Shown: positions 39,586 to 47,563 of the stretch, piece after piece | Position numbering within the stretch: position 1 is the stretch's first letter | Layout: the number at the start of each line of letters is the position of its first letter | Source of the DNA: Amoebophrya sp. A120 | Lineage: Eukaryota; Protista; Dinoflagellata | Assembly: GCA_905178155.1 (NCBI GenBank) | Contig: CAJINV010000014.1 | Span: 437,023 to 501,022, forward strand | Length of the DNA stretch: 64,000 nucleotides | Direction of reading: 5' to 3' | Notes under the pieces: model-generated | Seen by the model: the letters and a program-made list of their open reading frames with translations, nothing else | Databases searched by the model: none | Told to the model about the DNA's origin: nothing | Made by a program: the position numbers and the translations under genes

Positions 39586-42500
39586 TTATACCCCCCACGC
39601 ACCTCCACCAGTTGCAGCAGGCGACTCGCCGTTGTCGAGACTGTACGGGCTAGGGCTACCGTATGTGGAGGCACCTTCCCCTCCGGAGCCTAAAGCATAG
39701 TAATGCTGTTCGGCGACCGGAGCAATATGCTGTTGGTGGTTGTATTGTTCGTACTGGTTCGACGGTGTGTAGGACGATGCTGCGCTTGGCGTCGGCGTTG
39801 CTGCCTGGCTATGATTGTTGTAGCCACTATAGCCAACATTGTGGTAACTATTATAGCTGCCCTGCCCCTGCTGCTGCTGGTCATAATGAAAATTATTATC
39901 ATACTGCCGCTGTTCCTGCTCCCAGTGCTCCCGTTGCTGTTCCTCCCACTGCCTCTGTTGTTCCCGTTGGTCTAGCCACTTCAAGTTTTTTTGCAACATC
40001 CGCTCCGTCCAAAAGTTATTAAGAGGAAAAATCCCCCCTCCCCATATCGAAAAGGTATGCTTCCGGAAATTTGTGATGCTGATTTGCGACCTCAAATCAC
40101 GTCTGTCTTGCAAGAAGGCAACTCGACAAGCTACGCAGCATTGTGCAGGCGGTTTGTGATGCTGATGGGCCTACAGCACGGACGTTTCTCATGCTAGACG
40201 CCTAGGCCAGAGCCTCTCTACTCAGGCTTAGTATGGGGCTGCATTCCTCTCCAGCAAGACAGATCTTATTTGTGTCCGCAAATCCTGCATCAGAAACTTC
40301 GTTTTGATATGGGGAGGGGGGAAGGGGATTTTTCCTGTTGATAAAAGTGCCGGTCTTGCACGACCCGAGCCTTGTACTTCTCGAACGTGCTACTGACGTA
40401 ATTATCCACAGTAAATTTCCCGTACACGTACAAATGCAGTCTCTGCATGACAAAACTTGCCTTCAGTCCTAGTCTAGCATGACAAGTTGGACACTGCAAG
40501 TTAGCGAAATTTGCCATGCATTTTGTACATGTACGGGATATTTACATTGCATAATAATGGAGTGCATTCACCACCTCTTCCATTCCATACCCATCGTAGT
40601 GCTCCTGCAACACCGCGCGTCCCTTCGGCGAAAAGTCGCAGGGTCGAAGGTGGTCAAAGAGGTAAGCCTGCAGCTTTTGTAGCAGAGGTGCGGCCGCAGC
40701 GGATGAGGATGTCGTCTTGGCCGCGCCGTTCTTTCCCGACACAGTGACCGGCTCCTGGGGTCCGACGTTCAGTGTGGTTTTCAAGAATTCCTCGAAGCTG
40801 TCCTCTTCGTTCGAGGTTTCGGTCAGCGCAGACAGCATGCTGTTCGGCTCCTCGAGCTGGATATTCACATGACTTTCGTTGTTTGCTGCACTTGATTCTT
40901 GTGGTCTTGTACCACCAGCGGCGAGGATGTCCTCGACAGAAGCTGCTTGTGAATGATCGCTTTCCAGATCATGACCGTCGGCACGACAAGTTGTACTTGT
41001 TCCGTCTTGTTTGCTCTTCTGTTCTTCCGCTGCGAGAAGTAGTACAACTTCGTTCTCCCTTTTCTCTTCGTACCCCAGTAAAATCGCTTTCCGCACGTGC
41101 TCAAACAGCCCGCCTGACAACGTTTTCACAAAATTCTGGTCTTCTTTGTAAGAACCTCCCCACAAGGTTTCGTAAATGGCCCTCTCGTATCAAATGTAAA
41201 AATGTCTGGGTCTGGAAAAATGCACGTTTGTCATGCTTGTCTGGCATGACTCTTTAAATCTGTCATGCACGTTACCCAAGAGCTTCGTTTTTCTGTGATG
41301 CAGAAACGCAGTTTGTCATGCAGAATAGGCAACACCTGGAAGCTCAGAAACTTGTGATGCTGAGCCAGCATTTGTGGCCTCAGCATGAGACGCCACCCAG
41401 CATCACAAGTTTCCAGACATCCAGGGATTTTTACATTTGATATCTCGACTGCACTGGACCCCGCCAACGTTGCGAAGTCAATCAGGCTGCCCAGGTCCCG
41501 CTCCGGGTTCGCCTATGGATGTGTCAGGATCGAAATCGACAAAATTGAAAGATTTGCGATGCATAAAATGTAGGGCACTTCTGAAGGCCTGTATTGGGGA
41601 GCAGGCAAATGGGACCGATTGCAAGCCTCTTTAGGGGTATGCAATGCGCTGCCAGAGTAGCTGCACGACAGGAGGAGTCTTCTTTGCCCAAACAGCATGA
41701 CAGACTGGATCTGGGTGCTCCCGAAATTTGTAATGCGCCACTTGGAAACTGAGGCTCTAACTGACATCGATTTTGTGCATCACAAGTTTTTCGATTTTGT
41801 CGATTTCGATCCTGACACATCCATATCGCCAATTTGCAGAGGATTCGCTCCACGGTGCGGATCAACACCGCGTTCTTGAACCTCTCCCGCTGTTCCTCCT
41901 GCAGTCTCTTCTCCCGCTCTTCCGGCTTTTCCTTACTCGTATTCGCCTCGAACATAGCGACGGCCCGGGACAAACCGACCACCCGAGACACGAACAAGGA
42001 CTCAAAGTGGCGCTTCATAGCCAGCAAGTAAGACACGTCGACCGCGGCGTACGCGAGTAGAATTCCCTGCATGGGCCGCTCGGCCCAGACGTGGTAGCCG
42101 CCGCCGCGGCGGGGGTCGTAGAGAGCTTTCCCGCGCTCCTTCAAATCGGAAAACACGTCGCCGAGGTTCACTTCTTGATGGTGTGCGTTATTTTGCTGGA
42201 GGTTCATCTGTTCTTCTTCTTGCGAAGATTTTTCATGATGGGCGTTTGAAGAAGCTGCATGCTTTTCTGGTGGTACAACCTGGTGGTCGCGACTTGTTCT
42301 ACTAGCGTCCTCGAGCAGATGAGGTTGCACAGAGTTCGGTCCAGGACTAGCACCGGAGCGGCCGGTCGTATGGCTACAACTAGGCGCAGGAGTTGTACTA
42401 CTAGTCGCCTCATCAAAGTACGCCCCGAGCGCTTTGGGCAAGCCTTTCAGGTGTCGCGCGTAGTTTTGCCCGACCGACTCGGATATGCAGTGTAAAAGTA

Positions 42501-45500
42501 TCGCACTCGTATAAATGCCAGACTAGCATGACAAATCTGGTTTCTTACGTATTTTAGCATGACAAACTCAATTTTCATGCTGAGGAAATTTGTAATGCAT
42601 TTATACGAGTACGATACTTTTGCAGTTCATATCGGAGAGCAGGAACGAGATCTGCAGGTCGTACACGTTCCGCGGCATCACGCCGAAGTGGAAAAACACT
42701 GCCTCAAAGTCCTGCCGGCAGTCGAAGAGTACTTTTTGGCACTGCTCGCTCTCCAGCACGGTTTTCAGGTTGGGGTAACAAATGTCGTCGTCAAACGCCT
42801 TCTTCTGCAGCTCCACGAGGTCGACCAGGTAGACGGTTTTCTCCGTTTTCAGAGTCGTGGGTGGAGATATAGATATTGTCGTACTAGCGGTGTTGCTGAC
42901 ACAAGAACTTGAGGTGCTGCTTCCGGTGTATTCATGAATTTGGTTGTACACGTCGGGGTTTTGGTCCCTGTGAGCAGGGTCCAAGCAGAACGGCCCGTCT
43001 TTGATTTCCGTTTCCACGGTTTCCTCCACCATGATCTGCATCAGGCACACCTCGCCGGACTTTCCCAACTCCACGCCCTCGACGTCCATACCAAGCAGGC
43101 GGAAGGGCTCCTCTCGTGAGGACGATGCTGTTGCTAGCCCACGACCAGGGTCTTGATCTTCGGTAGTTCCTGTTCTACTTGTCGTATCTCCTTTTATTAC
43201 AGAACGAACAGAGGATGAAGATGCATCACCTTCGGTCGTAACGGAGGTGGTAATCAAAGAACCTTTATTCTTGTCGTCCTTCGGCGAAGTAGATGTAGAT
43301 CTAGAAGGAGTTGCCAACAATCTTTCCGCCAGCTTCTGGACTCCAATCACCGACCCCACCCAGACTATCCGCGGCAGGTGAGCGCGCCAAATTTTCTCCT
43401 GCTCAGAGATCTTTTGCCTCTCCGCCTCCGCATCGAGGAGCTCAGAAGATGCAAAAGCGCCATTTGGCAAGTTTGCTGCAGCTGCACCATTCAGCTGCAC
43501 CCTTTTCAGCAGCTCATCTGTCTTTCTCCTGGATTCCGGGGAGTAGGGCAAAAACCCGCTCGAAGGATTATTTGAAGATGTAGTCGTTTCCACTCCTGCT
43601 CTTTGTCGTTGATGCGCCGACGTCGTCGAGGAAAAGTCGCGCAAATCCAGTTTCTTCGGCATCGGCGGTCTCTCGAATTTCGGGCTCTCGAGCTCTTTCC
43701 CGGTTCGACGATCGATGATTTTGGCGAAAAAAGCCGCGTGAAGAAACCCCTTCGCGTCTCCGGGCGTTAGGAAAACCCCGTTGCGCGCCTGAAAAAAACG
43801 GAGTCCCGCCTTCAGCGCCAACGCAAAATCCACACAAATGATCGCGTCGCAGTCGTCGCGCATGCCGGATATTACGGTTTTTGTGGTTGATGGGGTGGGT
43901 GCTGTTGAGGTAATCATTTTCGACGTATTACTGGAGGTCAACGCAGACGTTGGCTTTGTTACGATTTGAGAACGTCCTTCATGGCCTTCGGCTGCAGCAC
44001 TAGCAACAGACGAGTCCTCGGGCTTCATCTTCTCGGTAGGGGGCTGAGCCTCTTGATGAGGTGGATCTGCTTCTTCTTTCACCTCCTCGTCCTTCATCTT
44101 GAAAAACCCCAGATCTTCCTCGTCTGGGCTATCTCGTCCAGAAGATGACTTGGCAAAGAAGTGAATGTGCTGCCTGGACATTCGGGAAAGACCACCGGAG
44201 GATAAGATATCCGGAATGACGGCGAGGTAGGTTCCGTGGTAAAGGAGGGGGGTGGAAGACGAAGTAGCTGTTGGGGGCCCGTTCTTGCTGCTGCTTGGTA
44301 CCACATCGTTCTTTTCGTTTTCAACACCAGCACCGCGAGGGGCTACCTCTGATGAAAAAGCGGAAAACACGGGCGTCATCAAGGCTTCCTCGTTGATCAT
44401 GTGGTCCGGCAGGCTGTGGCCCTGCACAGCTCGGACGAACCAAGCGTGCTGCTGGTCTTTTTCACCTCCACGACCTCCCGCAGCAGTAGGAGCGTCGTCA
44501 TCTTCTTCGCCTGGAGGTCGTGCCTCTTCATCTACATTTTCTTGCCCAAGAACATCTACGACTTCTTCCCGGTGCAGCAGCTGAAACCGCTGCTTGTCAT
44601 TGTGAACGCACACCCAATAGAGCTCCTCGAATGTCAGAGGCACCACGACCGGAGGAGCTGTGTCTTCAACCTTGTTCTGTGTGAGATCCGCATTCGTACT
44701 AGTACCCGCCGTACTGGTGACATAATTTTGTGTCTTGCTTGTTTGCTGTTCAACTTCAAGCCCTTTGGTCGTTTTAGTTCTACTAGCACCACTTGTACTA
44801 GTACACCTGACTATCTCCGGCATACCCAGGAAGCCTCTGTAGCAGTCCAGTAAGTGTCCGCAGTGCACATACCCATCTTTTGAAATCTTCAGCTTCTGCC
44901 GGTCCGCGCGGTGTCTCAGCGTGGCGGTAAGTTCCCTGCTCACCCATTCGCCTCGGCCTTGCGGGATCTTGTTGTACGCCGATCCGCGGCCCGCAGGGGT
45001 GTAAGCGGTGATGGAGAGGGAAACTAAAACTATTTGTATTTTTCCGGCGTGCTCTCGTGCGTTATTTGTTTCTGCACCATCTTCACAGCCCGACACAACA
45101 GTCCACTCCGCCTGCTCGGGCGGGCAGTAGACTTTTGCGCCGTTCACGTAGACAAAAGCCTCGGATTCCGGCACGGTAGTCGTAAGGATGGTTTTTGTCG
45201 TGATAGACACATCCGGGCTGCTCGGCGCGGAGAGCGGTTCTTTCACAGGAGCACTCGAGGTGGTGGAGGACATCAAAGCAGTCGTACTGTCAGTAACAGT
45301 GTCGCTCGTGGTGGTACCTTTGCACTGCACGCAATCCTCGAGTAGCTCCCACAGAACGAACTGTTGGTGTTGATTTTGGGGACCAGGTTTTACTTGTGGC
45401 GTTCTTTTAATATCATCTTCTTCCGCACGGGGACAGGAACTGCTTGACGCTGACGAGGAGGAGGCAGCAACTTCTAGTACTCCTGCCGGTCGTACGGACT

Positions 45501-46515
45501 CTGGCTCTGCCTGCCTCGGTATTTCCTCATGATCAGCTAGAACAATCTTGGCCTCCAGGCGGTACGGGTACTCGTGGTAGGCTCTGGATCCACTGCTGTA
45601 CAGCCACTGTCCCGTGAGCGCAGATTGGAGGCGATGGAGGAGCAATGGATCAGGAGGCTCCTGTGCTGGTGAGTGCTGGTCCGTGGCGTTGGAAGTAGAA
45701 CCGTTAGCCCTGCTTGAGGTGGAGGAAGATACAGATACTGCAGTGGCGTTAGTCGTTTCTGGTATCGTCTTCACCGCACAGATCTGCACCCCTGCGTGAC
45801 TCGAATGGCGCCAACTCAGCGACGGACCGATCATCTTTTGCTGCCTACTTTTTATTGCAGGTGTGACAGGGCCCTGAGGCTCTTGCGAATCAACTGGACC
45901 TTGATCGTTTTTAGTTGCGGAGGGCTGGTTGGTACAACCATTGTTTCCTGGCGCGAAAGAACGCGAAGATCTTGCTCCGACTTCTATGGCAGTACCAACA
46001 TGCTGTGGCTCCTGTGCAGGCGCGGCATCTTCAGACACGACCCCAAGAACGTTTGAAGATGTCGCCCCAAGAACGTCTTTCCGTTCAACCGCCGCAAACC
46101 TTCGCGACCACTCAGCCACGGCCTGGAACTCTGGCGTGTTTTTTTTCGGTCTTGCTACCCTCCCCGTCGACTTGTAGCACTCAGCGTCCGCTCGGTGCAG
46201 GAAAAGGCCAAAGATCCCGGTAGTACGTGACTCTGCATACATCACGCCGGAACTTTTCGCCACTTCCTTTAGCACCGTCCGCTCGCCAGTGTTCAGGTGG
46301 CGGCTTGGGGGGAAAAGGTAATGGATGATCTTCGGTGCTTGTTGATCTTCGCCAATGCATTTGCCGTTGTCGGTTGATGTTCCGGCTGTCTCCGGAGGTC
46401 CTCTGTGGTCATCTTGCTGCAGCTTAGGCTTCAGCTTGTTTTCATCTTTTTCGTCTCTTCCTTGCTGCAGCAGGCGGCTGCATGTCGCCTTGATTTCTTC
46501 CCGGAAATCCGTCAT
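39586..46515 (-). CDS. TPT1: Fusion protein: R3H-like + Tpt1/KptA RNA 2'-phosphotransferase + DEDDy (EXD1/Egalitarian-like) 3'-5' exonuclease + Q/Y/N-rich tail; 6 exons, ~1,915 aa
   Basis: Tpt1 motifs SRELTATLRH, DGYV, NDKQRF, VRAVQGHS, YHGT, GLSRMSRQHIHF, SGMR, NGVFLT (~43690-44950). Exonuclease motifs I DVEG, II FDCRQD, III YAAVDV plus VYDLQI and WAERPM (~42010-43100). R3H-like FPPSRHLNTGERTVLKEVAKSSGV…ES (~46200-46330). Five TIR introns removed in frame. Confidence 0.88.
40017..40343. mobile_element. Introner, TAT…ATA type, 5-bp TSD AAAGT
   Basis: tattaagaggaaaaatcccc…ccccatatc and gatatgggg…ggggatttttcctgttgata; AAAGT at 40012-40016 and 40344-40348; excision gives VVQDRHF|WTERMLQK. Confidence 0.85.
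40410..40545. mobile_element. Introner, CCCGTAC family
   Basis: gtaaatttcccgtacacgtacaaatgca and tgcattttgtacatgtacgggatatttac; removing 135 or 138 nt joins HYYAM to DNYVSSTFEKYK. Confidence 0.75.
41188..41442. mobile_element. Introner, TAT…ATA type, 5-bp TSD TCTCG
   Basis: tatcaaatgtaaaaat and atttttacatttgata; TCTCG at 41183-41187 and 41443-41447; excision gives SAVE|RAIYETLWGG. Confidence 0.9.
41514..41825. mobile_element. Introner, TAT…ATA type, ~37-bp TIR, 5-bp TSD TCGCC; can splice as GC-AG
   Basis: tatggatgtgtcaggatcgaaatcgacaaaat and attttgtcgatttcgatcctgacacatccata; TCGCC at 41509-41513 and 41826-41830; excision gives LCKL|ANPERDLG. Confidence 0.92.
42491..42626. mobile_element. 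Introner, TGCAAAAG family, inside the exonuclease domain
   Basis: tgtaaaagtatcgcactcgtataaatgc and gcatttatacgagtacgatacttttgca; direct repeat TGCAGT at 42486-42491 and 42621-42626; removing 135 nt gives DMNC|ISESVGQNYARHLKGL. Confidence 0.88.
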
Positions 46516-47563
46516 GATATTTCTATCGTGCTCCGGAGTGAATTTTTAGAATTACTACACGTTATAGGTCGGGTGAAACTGGAGCCGGATGAATTGAATG
46601 GTAAAGAAGTACGTCGCGTTCCGCCGAAGTGAAACTAACTACATAGTTGCTAAGCGTCGATCGAGTTTAGAAAAAACTACTTAAAACAGCAGCAAAACGA
46701 ATTTTGATGATGAATGTCGCTGAGATTTCTGTACACGCTGTTTATCATGGCCAGGAACAGGATGTGGTGACCGCTCTTTCGAAGTAGAGGACTTTACTAT
46801 GAGGCGAACTACATCTTGTAGGTGCCGTGCAAAAAGTGTTGTAGTGCTAGGCCAATTTTTTCTGTACCAAGATCTACTTCTGGAGATCCTCATTTTCAAC
46901 CAAAAAATCTAGCAAGTCAGATGAGCTCCAGCACCGGTCGACGAGGGTCTTCACAACTGTTGCAGCCACGATCGTGAGTTGTTGGTGTGCGGAGGTGCAA
47001 TCTTCATCACAGTGCGATCTTCTCACTCTTGTTGTTCGTCGAAGATGATCTCGTTATAGGGAAGAACAAGACCACCACCCTTTGAATTTGATGGAAACGA
47101 TGTAGACCAAGCAATCTGAAAAATCCACACGACGACGATGCCGAGAGGCAGAAAAAACAATATGGCGCAACCTTCTTCGGTACTGTAGTAGCTACCAAGG
47201 TTTTTCTGCCGAGAGGCAGAAAAAACAAACACTGAGGAGCTGAGAAGACCACGAAATCAGAGAGTCAATGCGGTACGAACAAAGTATTGTATTCATTTTG
47301 ATTTTCATGAGATTGTTGACAAGAAAATAACAGGACTCTTAACGTCAGCAGACGTCCAACCACCTGCAGAGTTTGTTAGCAGTGGGAATTTTGCTGAAAG
47401 TGAAAGAATGCAGTATCTATTTAGCTCGTTCATCATCATGTATAGAAGATGAGGCCGCGCACCCACAACAACTTGCCGCACTACATGTTGCGGGAATTCA
47501 TTTTCACGACCCAGCAACAGTACGACTTGTCGTGTCATCAGAAGTCTTGTCACCAAAACATGA

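What the first reader, a model, noticed from the sequence alone, without database searches (positions are those of the whole stretch)
39586..46515. Tpt1 RNA 2'-phosphotransferase fused to an intact DEDDy 3'-5' exonuclease and an R3H-like domain: candidate single-chain RNA end-healing/decay enzyme
Seen: the Tpt1/KptA domain and exonuclease motifs I and II lie in one uninterrupted ORF (42601-46515), so the fusion does not depend on a gene model. Motif III (YAAVDV) is added by an in-frame introner excision. The Tpt1 Arg-His-Arg-Arg tetrad (LRH, KQRF, MSRQHIH) and the exonuclease D-E-D-Y-D set both look complete. Known: Tpt1 uses NAD+ to remove the internal 2'-phosphate left by fungal/plant-type tRNA ligation, and some homologs ADP-ribosylate nucleic-acid ends; EXD1/Egl-type DEDDy domains act on RNA; R3H binds single-stranded nucleic acid (its His is replaced here, ERTVLK). 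Inference: a ~1,900-aa protein coupling RNA binding, 2'-phosphate removal and 3' trimming. I do not know this architecture from characterised proteins.
Basis: partly seen in the sequence, partly recalled or inferred. Interest (0 to 1): 0.88.

Follow-up and report, generated by a model that had tools for sequence, protein, structure and literature searches.

The report
Tpt1–exonuclease fusion protein of Amoebophrya
A parasitic dinoflagellate encodes one 1,903-residue protein joining an RNA 2'-phosphate-removing enzyme (Tpt1) to a 3'-5' exonuclease; this exact pairing is confined to Amoebophrya, but similar Tpt1-exonuclease fusions turn out to be common and unstudied in protists.

Summary
Window 39586-46515 (minus strand; Amoebophrya sp. 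A120) is one gene of six exons and 1,903 codons.

- **Both enzymes in one exon.** Exon 1, a 1,304-codon open frame, holds a Tpt1/KptA domain (Pfam E 1e-34). Its Arg-His-Arg-Arg tetrad is complete (R534, H535, R643, R781). The same exon holds motifs I and II of an RNase D/EXD1-type DEDDy exonuclease.
- **Motif III.** YAAVDV follows after a 153-nt in-frame introner. RNA contigs show that introner spliced out exactly.
- **Public annotation.** It splits the gene, and its exonuclease model starts inside the exonuclease domain. RNA covers the whole frame. The AT5.2 strain's model (55% identity) carries both domains in one protein.
- **R3H-like N-terminus.** Pfam misses it, but four weak lines agree, so it is probable (His replaced by Lys).

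- The genome has at least six other Tpt1 loci.
- The idea is not unique. More than 100 protein clusters, from trypanosomatids, Chromera, ciliates and algae, fuse Tpt1 to a different 3'-5' exonuclease (ERI-type DEDDh), in both domain orders. The PF01885+PF01612 pair itself was found only in Amoebophrya.

Most likely function is NAD+-dependent 2'-phosphate removal that licenses 3' trimming or decay. This is inferred, not shown. It is a new variant of a known, uncharacterised kind.

The parts
39586..46515 (-). Whole gene: 6 exons, 5 introns, 5,712 nt of coding sequence = 1,903 aa plus TAA stop
   Evidence: Public A120 model P0002 (CAD7967406.1) mapped to the window. Exon arithmetic. RNA contigs.
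42637..46515 (-). Exon 1 (1,293 codons): R3H-like region, conserved middle region, Tpt1 domain, and exonuclease motifs I and II
   Evidence: Uninterrupted frame. Pfam. RNA contigs of X1 cover 42632-46518 with no joint inside and no coverage upstream of 46531.
46165..46326 (-). R3H-like module (aa 64-117), with the motif Arg kept (R79) and the His replaced by Lys (K83)
   Evidence: Pfam finds nothing even at E<=10. ESM atlas top three named clusters are all R3H, scores 0.77-0.80. The AF2 model has beta-alpha-beta-beta-alpha topology, with block-mean pLDDT 64-77 over the structured part. Foldseek's top two hits are R3H structures 2lrr and 1whr, but with E 0.55-0.8. hhalign against R3H modules of five Tpt1 relatives gives P 1.3e-4, and the HMM score exceeds all 1,000 shuffles.
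44956..45660 (-). Middle region (aa 286-520), conserved with the AT5.2 orthologue; fold unknown, with low-complexity inserts
   Evidence: Alignment A3 shows 43% identity in conserved blocks. Pfam finds nothing. ESM atlas gives no hit. The AF2 model has pLDDT 48.8 and is unusable.
43759..44946 (-). Tpt1/KptA RNA 2'-phosphotransferase domain, split by low-complexity loop inserts; tetrad R534, H535, R643, R781
   Evidence: Pfam E 1.2e-34. Three profile stretches in the genome search, 5-103, 97-135 and 135-177 of 177. All family-invariant columns are kept in alignment A1. The nearest solved chains are named tRNA 2'-phosphotransferase 1 (7yw3, 7yw2).
42637..43392 (-). Exonuclease domain, first part: N-terminal helix (IWRAHLPRIVWV), a roughly 70-aa insert, ExoI D1144-x-E1146, ExoII D1269
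   Evidence: Pfam PF01612. Motif alignment with 21 homologues. The nearest solved relatives are the T. brucei RNase D-type protein 7c42/7c45, Egalitarian and EXD1.
42484..42636 (-). Intron 1: 153-nt in-frame introner with direct repeat TCCGA, terminal inverted repeats and no GT-AG
   Evidence: the joint skips 153 nt; 5 letters fit either side.
41998..42483 (-). Exonuclease domain, second part, in exon 2 (41831-42483): WAERP at 42087 and ExoIII YAAVD at 42034-42051
41514..41830 (-). Intron 2: 317-nt introner, direct repeat GGCGA, inverted repeats matching 37 of 40
   Evidence: spliced in an RNA contig.
41188..41447 (-). Intron 3: 260-nt introner, direct repeat CGAGA
   Evidence: spliced in an RNA contig.
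40403..40558 (-). Intron 4: 156 nt, direct repeat ATTA
   Evidence: public model only; not covered by the read stretch.
40017..40348 (-). Intron 5: 332 nt, direct repeat ACTTTT
   Evidence: public model only.
39586..41997 (-). C-terminal tail (rest of exon 2 and exons 3-6, about 450 aa; the range also spans introns 2-5): charged and Gln/Tyr-rich, no recognised domain
   Evidence: Pfam finds nothing on each exon frame or on P0002.

Best explanation
This is one gene for a 1,903-aa multidomain RNA-end enzyme of Amoebophrya. Its order is: an R3H-like single-strand-binding module, a conserved region of unknown fold, a catalytically complete Tpt1 domain, a catalytically complete RNase D/EXD1-type DEDDy 3'-5' exonuclease, and a low-complexity tail.

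Proposed mechanism:
1. The Tpt1 domain uses NAD+ to remove a 2'-phosphate. This may be an internal 2'-PO4 at a ligation junction, or a terminal 2'-PO4 left after a 2',3'-cyclic phosphate is opened.
2. That phosphate would otherwise stall a two-metal exonuclease, which needs a clean 3' end.
3. The tethered exonuclease then trims or degrades the RNA from its 3' end.

Shown: the gene structure, both domains in one frame, both catalytic sets, transcription of the whole frame, and conservation of the fusion between two strains.

Inferred: RNA as the substrate, the order of the two reactions, and their coupling.
For: One frame, two domains:
- Both Pfam domains lie in the single frame.
- The tetrad and all family-invariant Tpt1 residues are kept. 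The tetrad is essential for activity per PMC6333775.
- The D-E-D-Y-D set is kept, in columns that the 21 homologues also conserve. The corresponding DEDD residues Asp80, Glu82, Asp145 and Asp230 were identified as catalytic in the T. brucei enzyme TbRND, PMC7797062.

One gene, not two:
- The public exonuclease model P0002 starts at M1143, the first residue of the ExoI motif (MDVEG), with the domain's N-terminal helix about 100 aa upstream, so that start is an artefact.
- RNA contigs (run X1, shown to be RNA by three exact introner joints) cover 46518 down to 42632 at depth 3.4-9.4. The exonuclease contig reaches 43513, which is 424 nt upstream of the annotated start.
- The AT5.2 orthologue P0001 (55% identity) carries PF01885 and PF01612 in one model, and the linker is conserved.
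- Strain A25 has fragments of both domains on one contig.

Functional coupling:
- Tpt1 has been fused to another 3'-5' exonuclease family (ERI-type) in more than 100 protein clusters and in both domain orders. The Chromera version adds an MJ1316 cyclic-phosphate-end domain at the N-terminus.
- Some Tpt1 enzymes remove terminal 2'-phosphates (Munir 2019, as cited in PMC10275265).
- The genome holds a Trl1-type cyclic phosphodiesterase candidate, an enzyme type that makes 2'-PO4 ends.
Against: - No biochemical data exist for this or any Tpt1-exonuclease fusion.
- Short-read contigs cannot prove a single transcript. Depth is higher over the exonuclease part (9.4 against about 4-6), one bin (45562-45755) has no coverage, and the contigs are broken.
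- The Tpt1 domain carries four long low-complexity loop inserts that might impair it.
- The genome has RtcB and no detectable Trl1-type ligase domain (with a silent control), so a source of internal 2'-PO4 junctions is not established.
- Tpt1 enzymes can instead ADP-ribosylate 5'-phosphates of RNA or DNA.
- With at least six paralogues, the specific role of this copy is open.
Confidence: 0.55

Rival explanations
1. The Tpt1 domain acts mainly as an ADP-ribosyltransferase that caps 5'-phosphate ends of RNA or DNA. The exonuclease acts on the other end of the same molecule, or on DNA. The protein would then be a nucleic-acid marking and processing enzyme rather than a 2'-phosphate remover.
For: 5'-phosphate ADP-ribosylation by a subset of Tpt1 enzymes, including the human orthologue TRPT1, is documented (PMC10275265; titles and abstracts). 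The Tpt1 domain is closest by sequence to solved chains named tRNA 2'-phosphotransferase 1. RtcB is present and no Trl1-type ligase domain was detected. Other Tpt1 relatives are fused to NADAR, a domain predicted to process ADP-ribose derivatives.
Against: The full tetrad used for 2'-PO4 chemistry is kept. The Chromera fusion adds a cyclic-phosphate-end recognition domain, which points to 3'-end chemistry. A CPD-type candidate exists in the genome.
Confidence: 0.2
2. It is a housekeeping tRNA-splicing Tpt1 that happens to carry an exonuclease, for example for tRNA 3'-trailer or intron removal. It would have no wider role.
For: Trypanosomatids splice tRNA-Tyr through a Trl1-type ligase (PMC4931112). 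The trypanosomatid proteins found here that databases name '2'-phosphotransferase' are exonuclease-Tpt1 fusions.
Against: A120 has at least six other Tpt1 loci, two of them compact and canonical-looking. It also has RtcB. This copy is the most elaborated and insert-rich of them.
Confidence: 0.12
3. These are two separate genes or proteins, as in the public A120 annotation, with an internal start at M1143. The shared frame would be incidental.
For: The public model P0002 starts at M1143. A second called fragment, P0003, covers aa 331-1011 only. RNA depth is about twice as high over the 3' part.
Against: M1143 is the first residue of the ExoI motif, with the domain's N-terminal helix upstream of it. 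P0003 has neither a start nor a stop, and its end lies close to an RNA-contig break. No stop codon occurs in 3.9 kb. The linker is conserved with AT5.2, whose model is fused. The exonuclease RNA contig extends 424 nt upstream of M1143.
Confidence: 0.08
4. It is a non-catalytic RNA-binding scaffold, like EXD1 or Egalitarian, whose exonuclease folds no longer cut.
For: EXD1 and Egalitarian are among the nearest solved relatives.
Against: All five DEDDy residues and the Tpt1 tetrad are intact and conserved between strains only 55% identical.
Confidence: 0.05

Closest known systems
Tpt1-ERI-type exonuclease fusions of protists (PF01885 + PF00929), e.g. Chromera velia A0A0G4H1V6, Stylonychia lemnae, Amorphochlora, Cymbomonas, and Trypanosoma/Leishmania 'phosphotransferase, putative'
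   Same: A full-length Tpt1 domain is joined covalently to a DEDD-superfamily 3'-5' exonuclease. In Chromera an N-terminal RNA-end-recognition domain is added, parallel to the R3H-like module here. Most have the same order, Tpt1 then exonuclease.
   Different: Their exonuclease is the DEDDh ERI1/ERI3 type, not the DEDDy RNase D/EXD1 type. They are 400-750 aa, against 1,903 here. Trypanosomatids have the reverse order. No such fusion was seen in A120 itself: its PF00929 hits lie on contigs C1, C12 and C7, none of which carries a Tpt1 locus. All are uncharacterised, and no paper on them was found in six literature searches aimed at such fusions.
Tpt1/TRPT1/KptA RNA 2'-phosphotransferase (yeast Tpt1, human TRPT1, C. 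thermocellum Tpt1)
   Same: It has the same two-lobe domain and the same Arg-His-Arg-Arg tetrad and HGT / R-x-H-I-H / SGMR motifs.
   Different: Characterised members are stand-alone proteins of about 180-250 aa. Here the domain is stretched over about 400 aa by loop inserts and embedded in a 1,903-aa protein.
RNase D-group DEDDy exonucleases: TbRND of T. brucei (PDB 7c42/7c45), then Egalitarian and EXD1
   Same: These are the best sequence matches among solved structures. The FDCRxD, WxxRP and YAAxDV motifs are shared. TbRND is an active two-metal exoribonuclease.
   Different: TbRND carries CCHC zinc fingers and trims guide-RNA U-tails. EXD1 and Egalitarian are described as non-catalytic (my own knowledge, not tested here). 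None is fused to Tpt1.
R3H-Tpt1 proteins (5 of 93 Tpt1 relatives, e.g. P0024)
   Same: An R3H module lies N-terminal to Tpt1.
   Different: In those proteins R3H passes Pfam and keeps the His, sits directly before Tpt1, and no exonuclease is present. In the Tpt1 tree they form a separate clade.

Membership tests
Tpt1/KptA (PF01885) | Profile match above the curated cut-off across both lobes | tested here: met
   120.3 bits against a cut-off of 26. Profile positions 5-177 are covered in three stretches.
Tpt1/KptA (PF01885) | Arg-His-Arg-Arg catalytic tetrad | tested here: met
   R534, H535, R643 and R781 sit in the invariant or near-invariant columns of alignment A1 and of the HMMER alignment to the solved tRNA 2'-phosphotransferase 1 chains. 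Their essentiality is reported in PMC6333775.
Tpt1/KptA (PF01885) | NAD+-dependent removal of RNA 2'-phosphate | not testable with these tools
   Needs an enzyme assay or yeast tpt1-null complementation.
RNase D-like DEDDy 3'-5' exonuclease (PF01612) | Profile match above the curated cut-off | tested here: met
   28.8 bits (exon 1 alone) and 36.1 bits (public model P0002) against a cut-off of 23.6.
RNase D-like DEDDy 3'-5' exonuclease (PF01612) | ExoI D-x-E, ExoII D and ExoIII Y-x3-D all present | tested here: met
   D1144 and E1146, D1269, and YAAVD in exon 2 align with the conserved columns of 21 homologues.
RNase D-like DEDDy 3'-5' exonuclease (PF01612) | Metal-dependent 3'-5' exonuclease activity and its substrate (RNA or DNA) | not testable with these tools
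   Needs an assay.
R3H domain (PF01424) | Pfam profile match | tested here: not met
   No hit even at E<=10.
R3H domain (PF01424) | Arg-x3-His motif | tested here: not met
   hhalign places ERTVLK on QRKFIH. The Arg is kept and the His is replaced by Lys.
R3H domain (PF01424) | Beta-alpha-beta-beta-alpha fold and profile similarity to bona fide R3H modules | tested here: inconclusive
   hhalign gives P 1.3e-4 and probability 54%, and the HMM score beats 1,000 shuffles. The AF2 topology fits but mean pLDDT is 59. Foldseek's top two hits are R3H at E 0.55-0.8. ESM's top three named clusters are R3H at 0.77-0.80.
Tpt1-ERI fusion family (PF01885 + PF00929) | The exonuclease partner is of the RNase_T/ERI DEDDh type | tested here: not met
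   The partner here is PF01612, and there is no PF00929 match in the gene. It resembles that family functionally but is not a member.

The most novel reading that the evidence does not exclude
The expanded Tpt1 set of Amoebophrya (at least seven loci), including this exonuclease fusion, might serve a spliceosome-independent cut-and-ligate route. That route would remove the hairpin-ended, non-GT-AG introners filling this genome: ligation would leave a 2'-phosphate at mRNA junctions for Tpt1 to clear, and the exonuclease would destroy the excised hairpins.

A more moderate novel reading, at about 0.35 probability: three separately arranged Tpt1-exonuclease fusions reveal a general, undescribed eukaryotic pathway. 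In it, Tpt1 heals 2'-phosphorylated RNA ends for 3' decay, which would answer the 'puzzle of Tpt1'.
Probability: 0.04. Interest if true: 0.95.

Novelty: new variant of a known kind. Interest (0 to 1): 0.55.

Why it matters
Why Tpt1 is kept in organisms that do not need it for tRNA splicing is a recognised open question (PMC10275265, 'The puzzle of Tpt1 in other organisms'; PMC6333775).

Gene fusions are strong hints of functional partnership. Tpt1 is joined to a 3'-5' exonuclease in three arrangements:
- Tpt1 then ERI-type exonuclease;
- ERI-type exonuclease then Tpt1;
- in Amoebophrya, Tpt1 then an RNase D-type exonuclease.

This points to a link between 2'-phosphate removal, or RNA ADP-ribosylation, and 3'-end trimming or decay. 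That link can be tested directly with recombinant protein.

The Amoebophrya case adds the evidence that the exonuclease family is interchangeable. It also corrects a split public gene model. The protein itself is one lineage-specific variant, so the wider fusion class is the more valuable lead.

Tried and rejected
I could not see the official neighbouring gene calls, the A25 locus, or the source organisms of unnamed fusion proteins.
- **Raw RNA runs X7-X9** did not cover the gene. The 77 reads of X7 hit only a 30-nt introner end at 41188-41217. Only Logan contigs of X1 were informative.
- **Pfam on exons 2-6 and on neighbouring frames** found nothing.
- **BLASTP of the N-terminus against the R3H-Tpt1 protein P0024** was not significant.
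- **A first jackhmmer/hhalign attempt** drifted into Tpt1 segments and was discarded. It was redone properly.
- **The AF2 model of the middle region** (pLDDT 48.8) was too poor to search, and the ESM atlas gave no hit.
- **The Tpt1-domain tree** is largely unresolved. It does not show whether Amoebophrya swapped the exonuclease in an ancestral Tpt1-ERI fusion or fused the two anew.
- **The PF09511 (Trl1 ligase) search** was negative, but its control was silent, so absence is not shown.
- **The candidate kinase-CPD locus** gave no significant match to solved structures.
Exons were searched by reference, and the public models P0001 and P0002 stood in for the spliced 3' part.


Full report
**What is there**

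The window belongs to Amoebophrya sp. A120 (RCC4398). A public protein of that strain, CAD7967406.1 (P0002), matches the locus at 99% identity. The genome measures 115.5 Mb in 401 contigs.

On the minus strand, 42601-46515 is a single open frame of 1,304 codons starting at ATG 46515. Pfam finds two families in this one frame:
- PTS_2-RNA (Tpt1/KptA): E 1.2e-34, 120 bits against a cut-off of 26.
- DNA_pol_A_exo1: E 1.3e-6, 28.8 bits against a cut-off of 23.6.

**Gene model**

I mapped the public A120 model P0002 onto the window. It gives five introns:

| Intron | Coordinates | Length | Direct repeat |
|---|---|---|---|
| 1 | 42484-42636 | 153 nt, in frame | TCCGA |
| 2 | 41514-41830 | 317 nt | GGCGA |
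| 3 | 41188-41447 | 260 nt | CGAGA |
| 4 | 40403-40558 | 156 nt | ATTA |
| 5 | 40017-40348 | 332 nt | ACTTTT |

- Each intron is bounded by a 4-6-nt direct repeat. Introns 1-3 have clear terminal inverted repeats (26-37 of the first 40 positions pair), while introns 4 and 5 pair at only 9 and 16 of 40.
- None has GT-AG ends within the shift its repeat allows; I checked the donor side of introns 3 and 5 position by position.
- These are the 'introner elements' already described for this genome. More than 60% of its introns are non-canonical, with inverted repeats of 8-20 nt and direct repeats of 3-5 nt (PMC7789003).
- Logan contigs of run X1 skip exactly 153, 317 and 260 nt at introns 1-3. This shows both that X1 is RNA and that the splices are real. 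Introns 4 and 5 rest on the public model alone.
- With ATG 46515 as the start, the six exons sum to 5,712 nt, which is 1,903 codons plus TAA.

**One gene or two?**

The public annotation does not show the fusion. P0002 starts at M1143, and a second called fragment, P0003, is an internal piece (aa 331-1011) with neither start nor stop. Four observations say this split is an artefact:
1. M1143 is the first residue of the ExoI motif MDVEG. Homologues show that the domain also needs the helix IWRAHLPRIVWV... about 100 aa upstream.
2. There is no stop codon anywhere in 3.9 kb.
3. X1 RNA contigs tile the frame from 46518 to 42632 at depth 3.4-9.4. No joints fall inside and nothing is covered upstream of 46531. 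The contig carrying the spliced exonuclease exons reaches 43513, which is 424 nt upstream of M1143. The end of P0003 (about 43483) lies close to a break between RNA contigs (43501-43513), and its start lies just downstream of the one uncovered bin.
4. The orthologue in strain AT5.2 (P0001, 915 aa, 55% identity) carries PF01885 and PF01612 in a single model, with a conserved linker. Strain A25 has partial models of both domains on one contig.

Short-read contigs cannot prove a single molecule, so I leave about 8% for separate products.

**Are the enzymes intact?**

*Tpt1.* In an alignment with 13 family members, the window keeps every invariant column:
- L-R-H (R534, H535)
- K-x-R-F (R643)
- R-A-x-Q-G-H-S
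- H-G-T
- R-x-H-I-H (R781)
- S-G-M-R

These are shown and in the HMMER alignment to the solved tRNA 2'-phosphotransferase 1 chains. [quoted passage not shown] The domain is stretched by four low-complexity loop inserts, and other eukaryotic Tpt1s also have inserts at these loops.

*Exonuclease.* D1144-x-E1146, D1269 and Y-A-A-V-D align with the conserved ExoI, ExoII and ExoIII columns of 21 homologues. By sequence, the nearest solved structures are:
- the T. brucei RNase D-type protein (7c42/7c45; the TbRND entries of PMC7797062), an active two-metal exoribonuclease whose DEDD residues are catalytic;
- then Egalitarian and EXD1.

**The R3H-like N-terminus**

Pfam gives nothing even at E<=10, and BLASTP to an R3H-Tpt1 protein is not significant. 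Four weak, independent lines nevertheless agree:
- The three best named ESM-atlas clusters are all R3H, with scores 0.77-0.80.
- A single-sequence AF2 model has R3H's beta-alpha-beta-beta-alpha order, with block-mean pLDDT 64-77 over the structured part.
- Foldseek's two top PDB hits are R3H domains, but at E 0.55-0.8.
- hhalign against the R3H modules of five Tpt1 relatives gives P 1.3e-4 over 48 columns. The corresponding HMM score exceeds all 1,000 shuffles.

The alignment puts ERTVLK on QRKFIH, so the Arg is kept and the His is a Lys. I rate an R3H fold at about 75%.

The conserved middle region (aa 286-520) remains unidentified.

**How unusual is the architecture?**

*The exact pair.* An exhaustive phmmer search of the AT5.2 protein against 1.84 billion representatives returned only Amoebophrya proteins at the top. 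Re-scoring all listed hits with each domain separately showed that only P0001 matches both. Two word-indexed searches of 5.8 billion clusters gave the same answer. PF01885+PF01612 therefore appears confined to Amoebophrya.

*The general idea.* This is not unique. Pfam scans of the Tpt1 relatives showed fusions to R3H (5 of 93), NADAR (3), RNase_T (2), FHA and a serine hydrolase. Following the RNase_T cases gave these results:
- Nearly all of the 120 best clusters listed in the search carry PF01885+PF00929.
- Named sources include many Trypanosoma and Leishmania species, Leptomonas, Chromera velia, Stylonychia, Amorphochlora, Cymbomonas and Heterosigma.
- Their exonuclease is of the ERI1/ERI3 type.
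- Domain order differs: Tpt1 then exonuclease in ciliate, algal and chromerid proteins, and exonuclease then Tpt1 in trypanosomatids.
- Chromera adds an N-terminal MJ1316 'RNA cyclic group end recognition' domain.

A120 itself shows no Tpt1-ERI fusion: its PF00929 hits lie on contigs that carry no Tpt1 locus. A Tpt1-domain tree pairs A120 with AT5.2 strongly but is otherwise unresolved, so the origin of the fusion is open.

Six full-text searches aimed at Tpt1-exonuclease fusions found no paper describing any.

**Genomic context**

- This is not the only Tpt1. At least six other loci match PF01885: two on contig C9, and one each on C2, C17, C5 and C10.
- RtcB is present.
- The Trl1-type ligase domain was not found, but the control for that search was silent, so absence is not shown.
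- A Trl1-type cyclic phosphodiesterase tail (PF08302, E 4.9e-10) lies downstream of a P-loop frame on C3.
- Neighbouring frames in the window have no Pfam families.

**Mechanism**

DEDD exonucleases need an unblocked 3' end. Tpt1 removes internal 2'-phosphates, and in some species terminal 2'-phosphates as well (PMC10275265).

The repeated fusion of the two activities, and in Chromera the added cyclic-phosphate-end reader, make the following the most economical reading: a single chain in which NAD+-dependent 2'-phosphate removal licenses 3' trimming or decay, with the R3H-like module holding single-stranded RNA.

This is an inference. The main rival is 5'-phosphate ADP-ribosylation, also a documented Tpt1 activity.

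The idea noted elsewhere in this scan (s1-870704), that the enzyme serves a cut-and-ligate route for hairpin introners, is not excluded. It has no direct support beyond the Tpt1 expansion and the CPD candidate.

**Verdict**

- This is a new, lineage-restricted variant (exonuclease family swapped, R3H-like module added) of a widespread but uncharacterised class of Tpt1-exonuclease fusions.
- Interest is 0.55, and the more valuable lead is the class as a whole.

Noticed in passing
Public proteins P0131, P0081, P0169-P0287 (not in the window): Tpt1 fused to an ERI1/ERI3-type DEDDh exonuclease (PF01885+PF00929) is widespread in protists: trypanosomatids, Chromera, Stylonychia, Amorphochlora, Cymbomonas and Heterosigma. 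It occurs in both domain orders, and Chromera adds an MJ1316 cyclic-phosphate-end domain. No paper describing this was found.
   Followed up: partly
G000:C9:1384852-1385349, C9:1423008-1423508, C2:6482105-6484944, C17:1241462-1242355, C5:6896156-6896359, C10:3867860-3869082 (L001-L007): There are at least six further Tpt1/KptA loci in the A120 genome. The two on C9 are compact, and those on C2 and C17 are insert-rich like this one. Which is the housekeeping copy is unknown.
   Followed up: partly
G000:C3:2821287-2825210 (-) (L010:287-598 and L010:2913-4211): A Trl1-type cyclic phosphodiesterase tail (PF08302, E 4.9e-10) lies downstream of a frame with a P-loop (AAA_17, E 6e-6). This may be a kinase-CPD RNA end-healing protein that would generate 2'-phosphate ends. 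No ligase domain was recognised.
   Followed up: partly
window 42637-46515 against public models: The public A120 annotation breaks this gene. CAD7967406.1 starts at M1143, the first residue of the exonuclease ExoI motif. A second called fragment covers aa 331-1011 without start or stop. The breaks lie close to low-coverage gaps in the RNA contigs.
   Followed up: yes
window 46518-46900: RNA coverage stops within 3-16 nt of the ATG at 46515, with none upstream. This implies either a very short 5' UTR or a trans-splice acceptor just before the start codon.
   Followed up: no
window 41188-41217: 77 raw RNA reads of run X7 match only this 30-nt end of intron 3 and continue into unrelated sequence on both sides. 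The introner terminus is therefore a repeated element transcribed elsewhere, possibly in another strain.
   Followed up: no
window 42484-42636, 41514-41830, 41188-41447: The introners share internal TTGTCATGC-like words as well as their inverted ends (seen while reading). This was also noted by another first-stage reading (s1-870656).
   Followed up: no
Public proteins P0030, P0066, P0077, P0056, P0043: Other Tpt1 fusions occur among the nearest relatives: Tpt1-NADAR, Tpt1-FHA, and a serine hydrolase (FSH1)-Tpt1.
   Followed up: no
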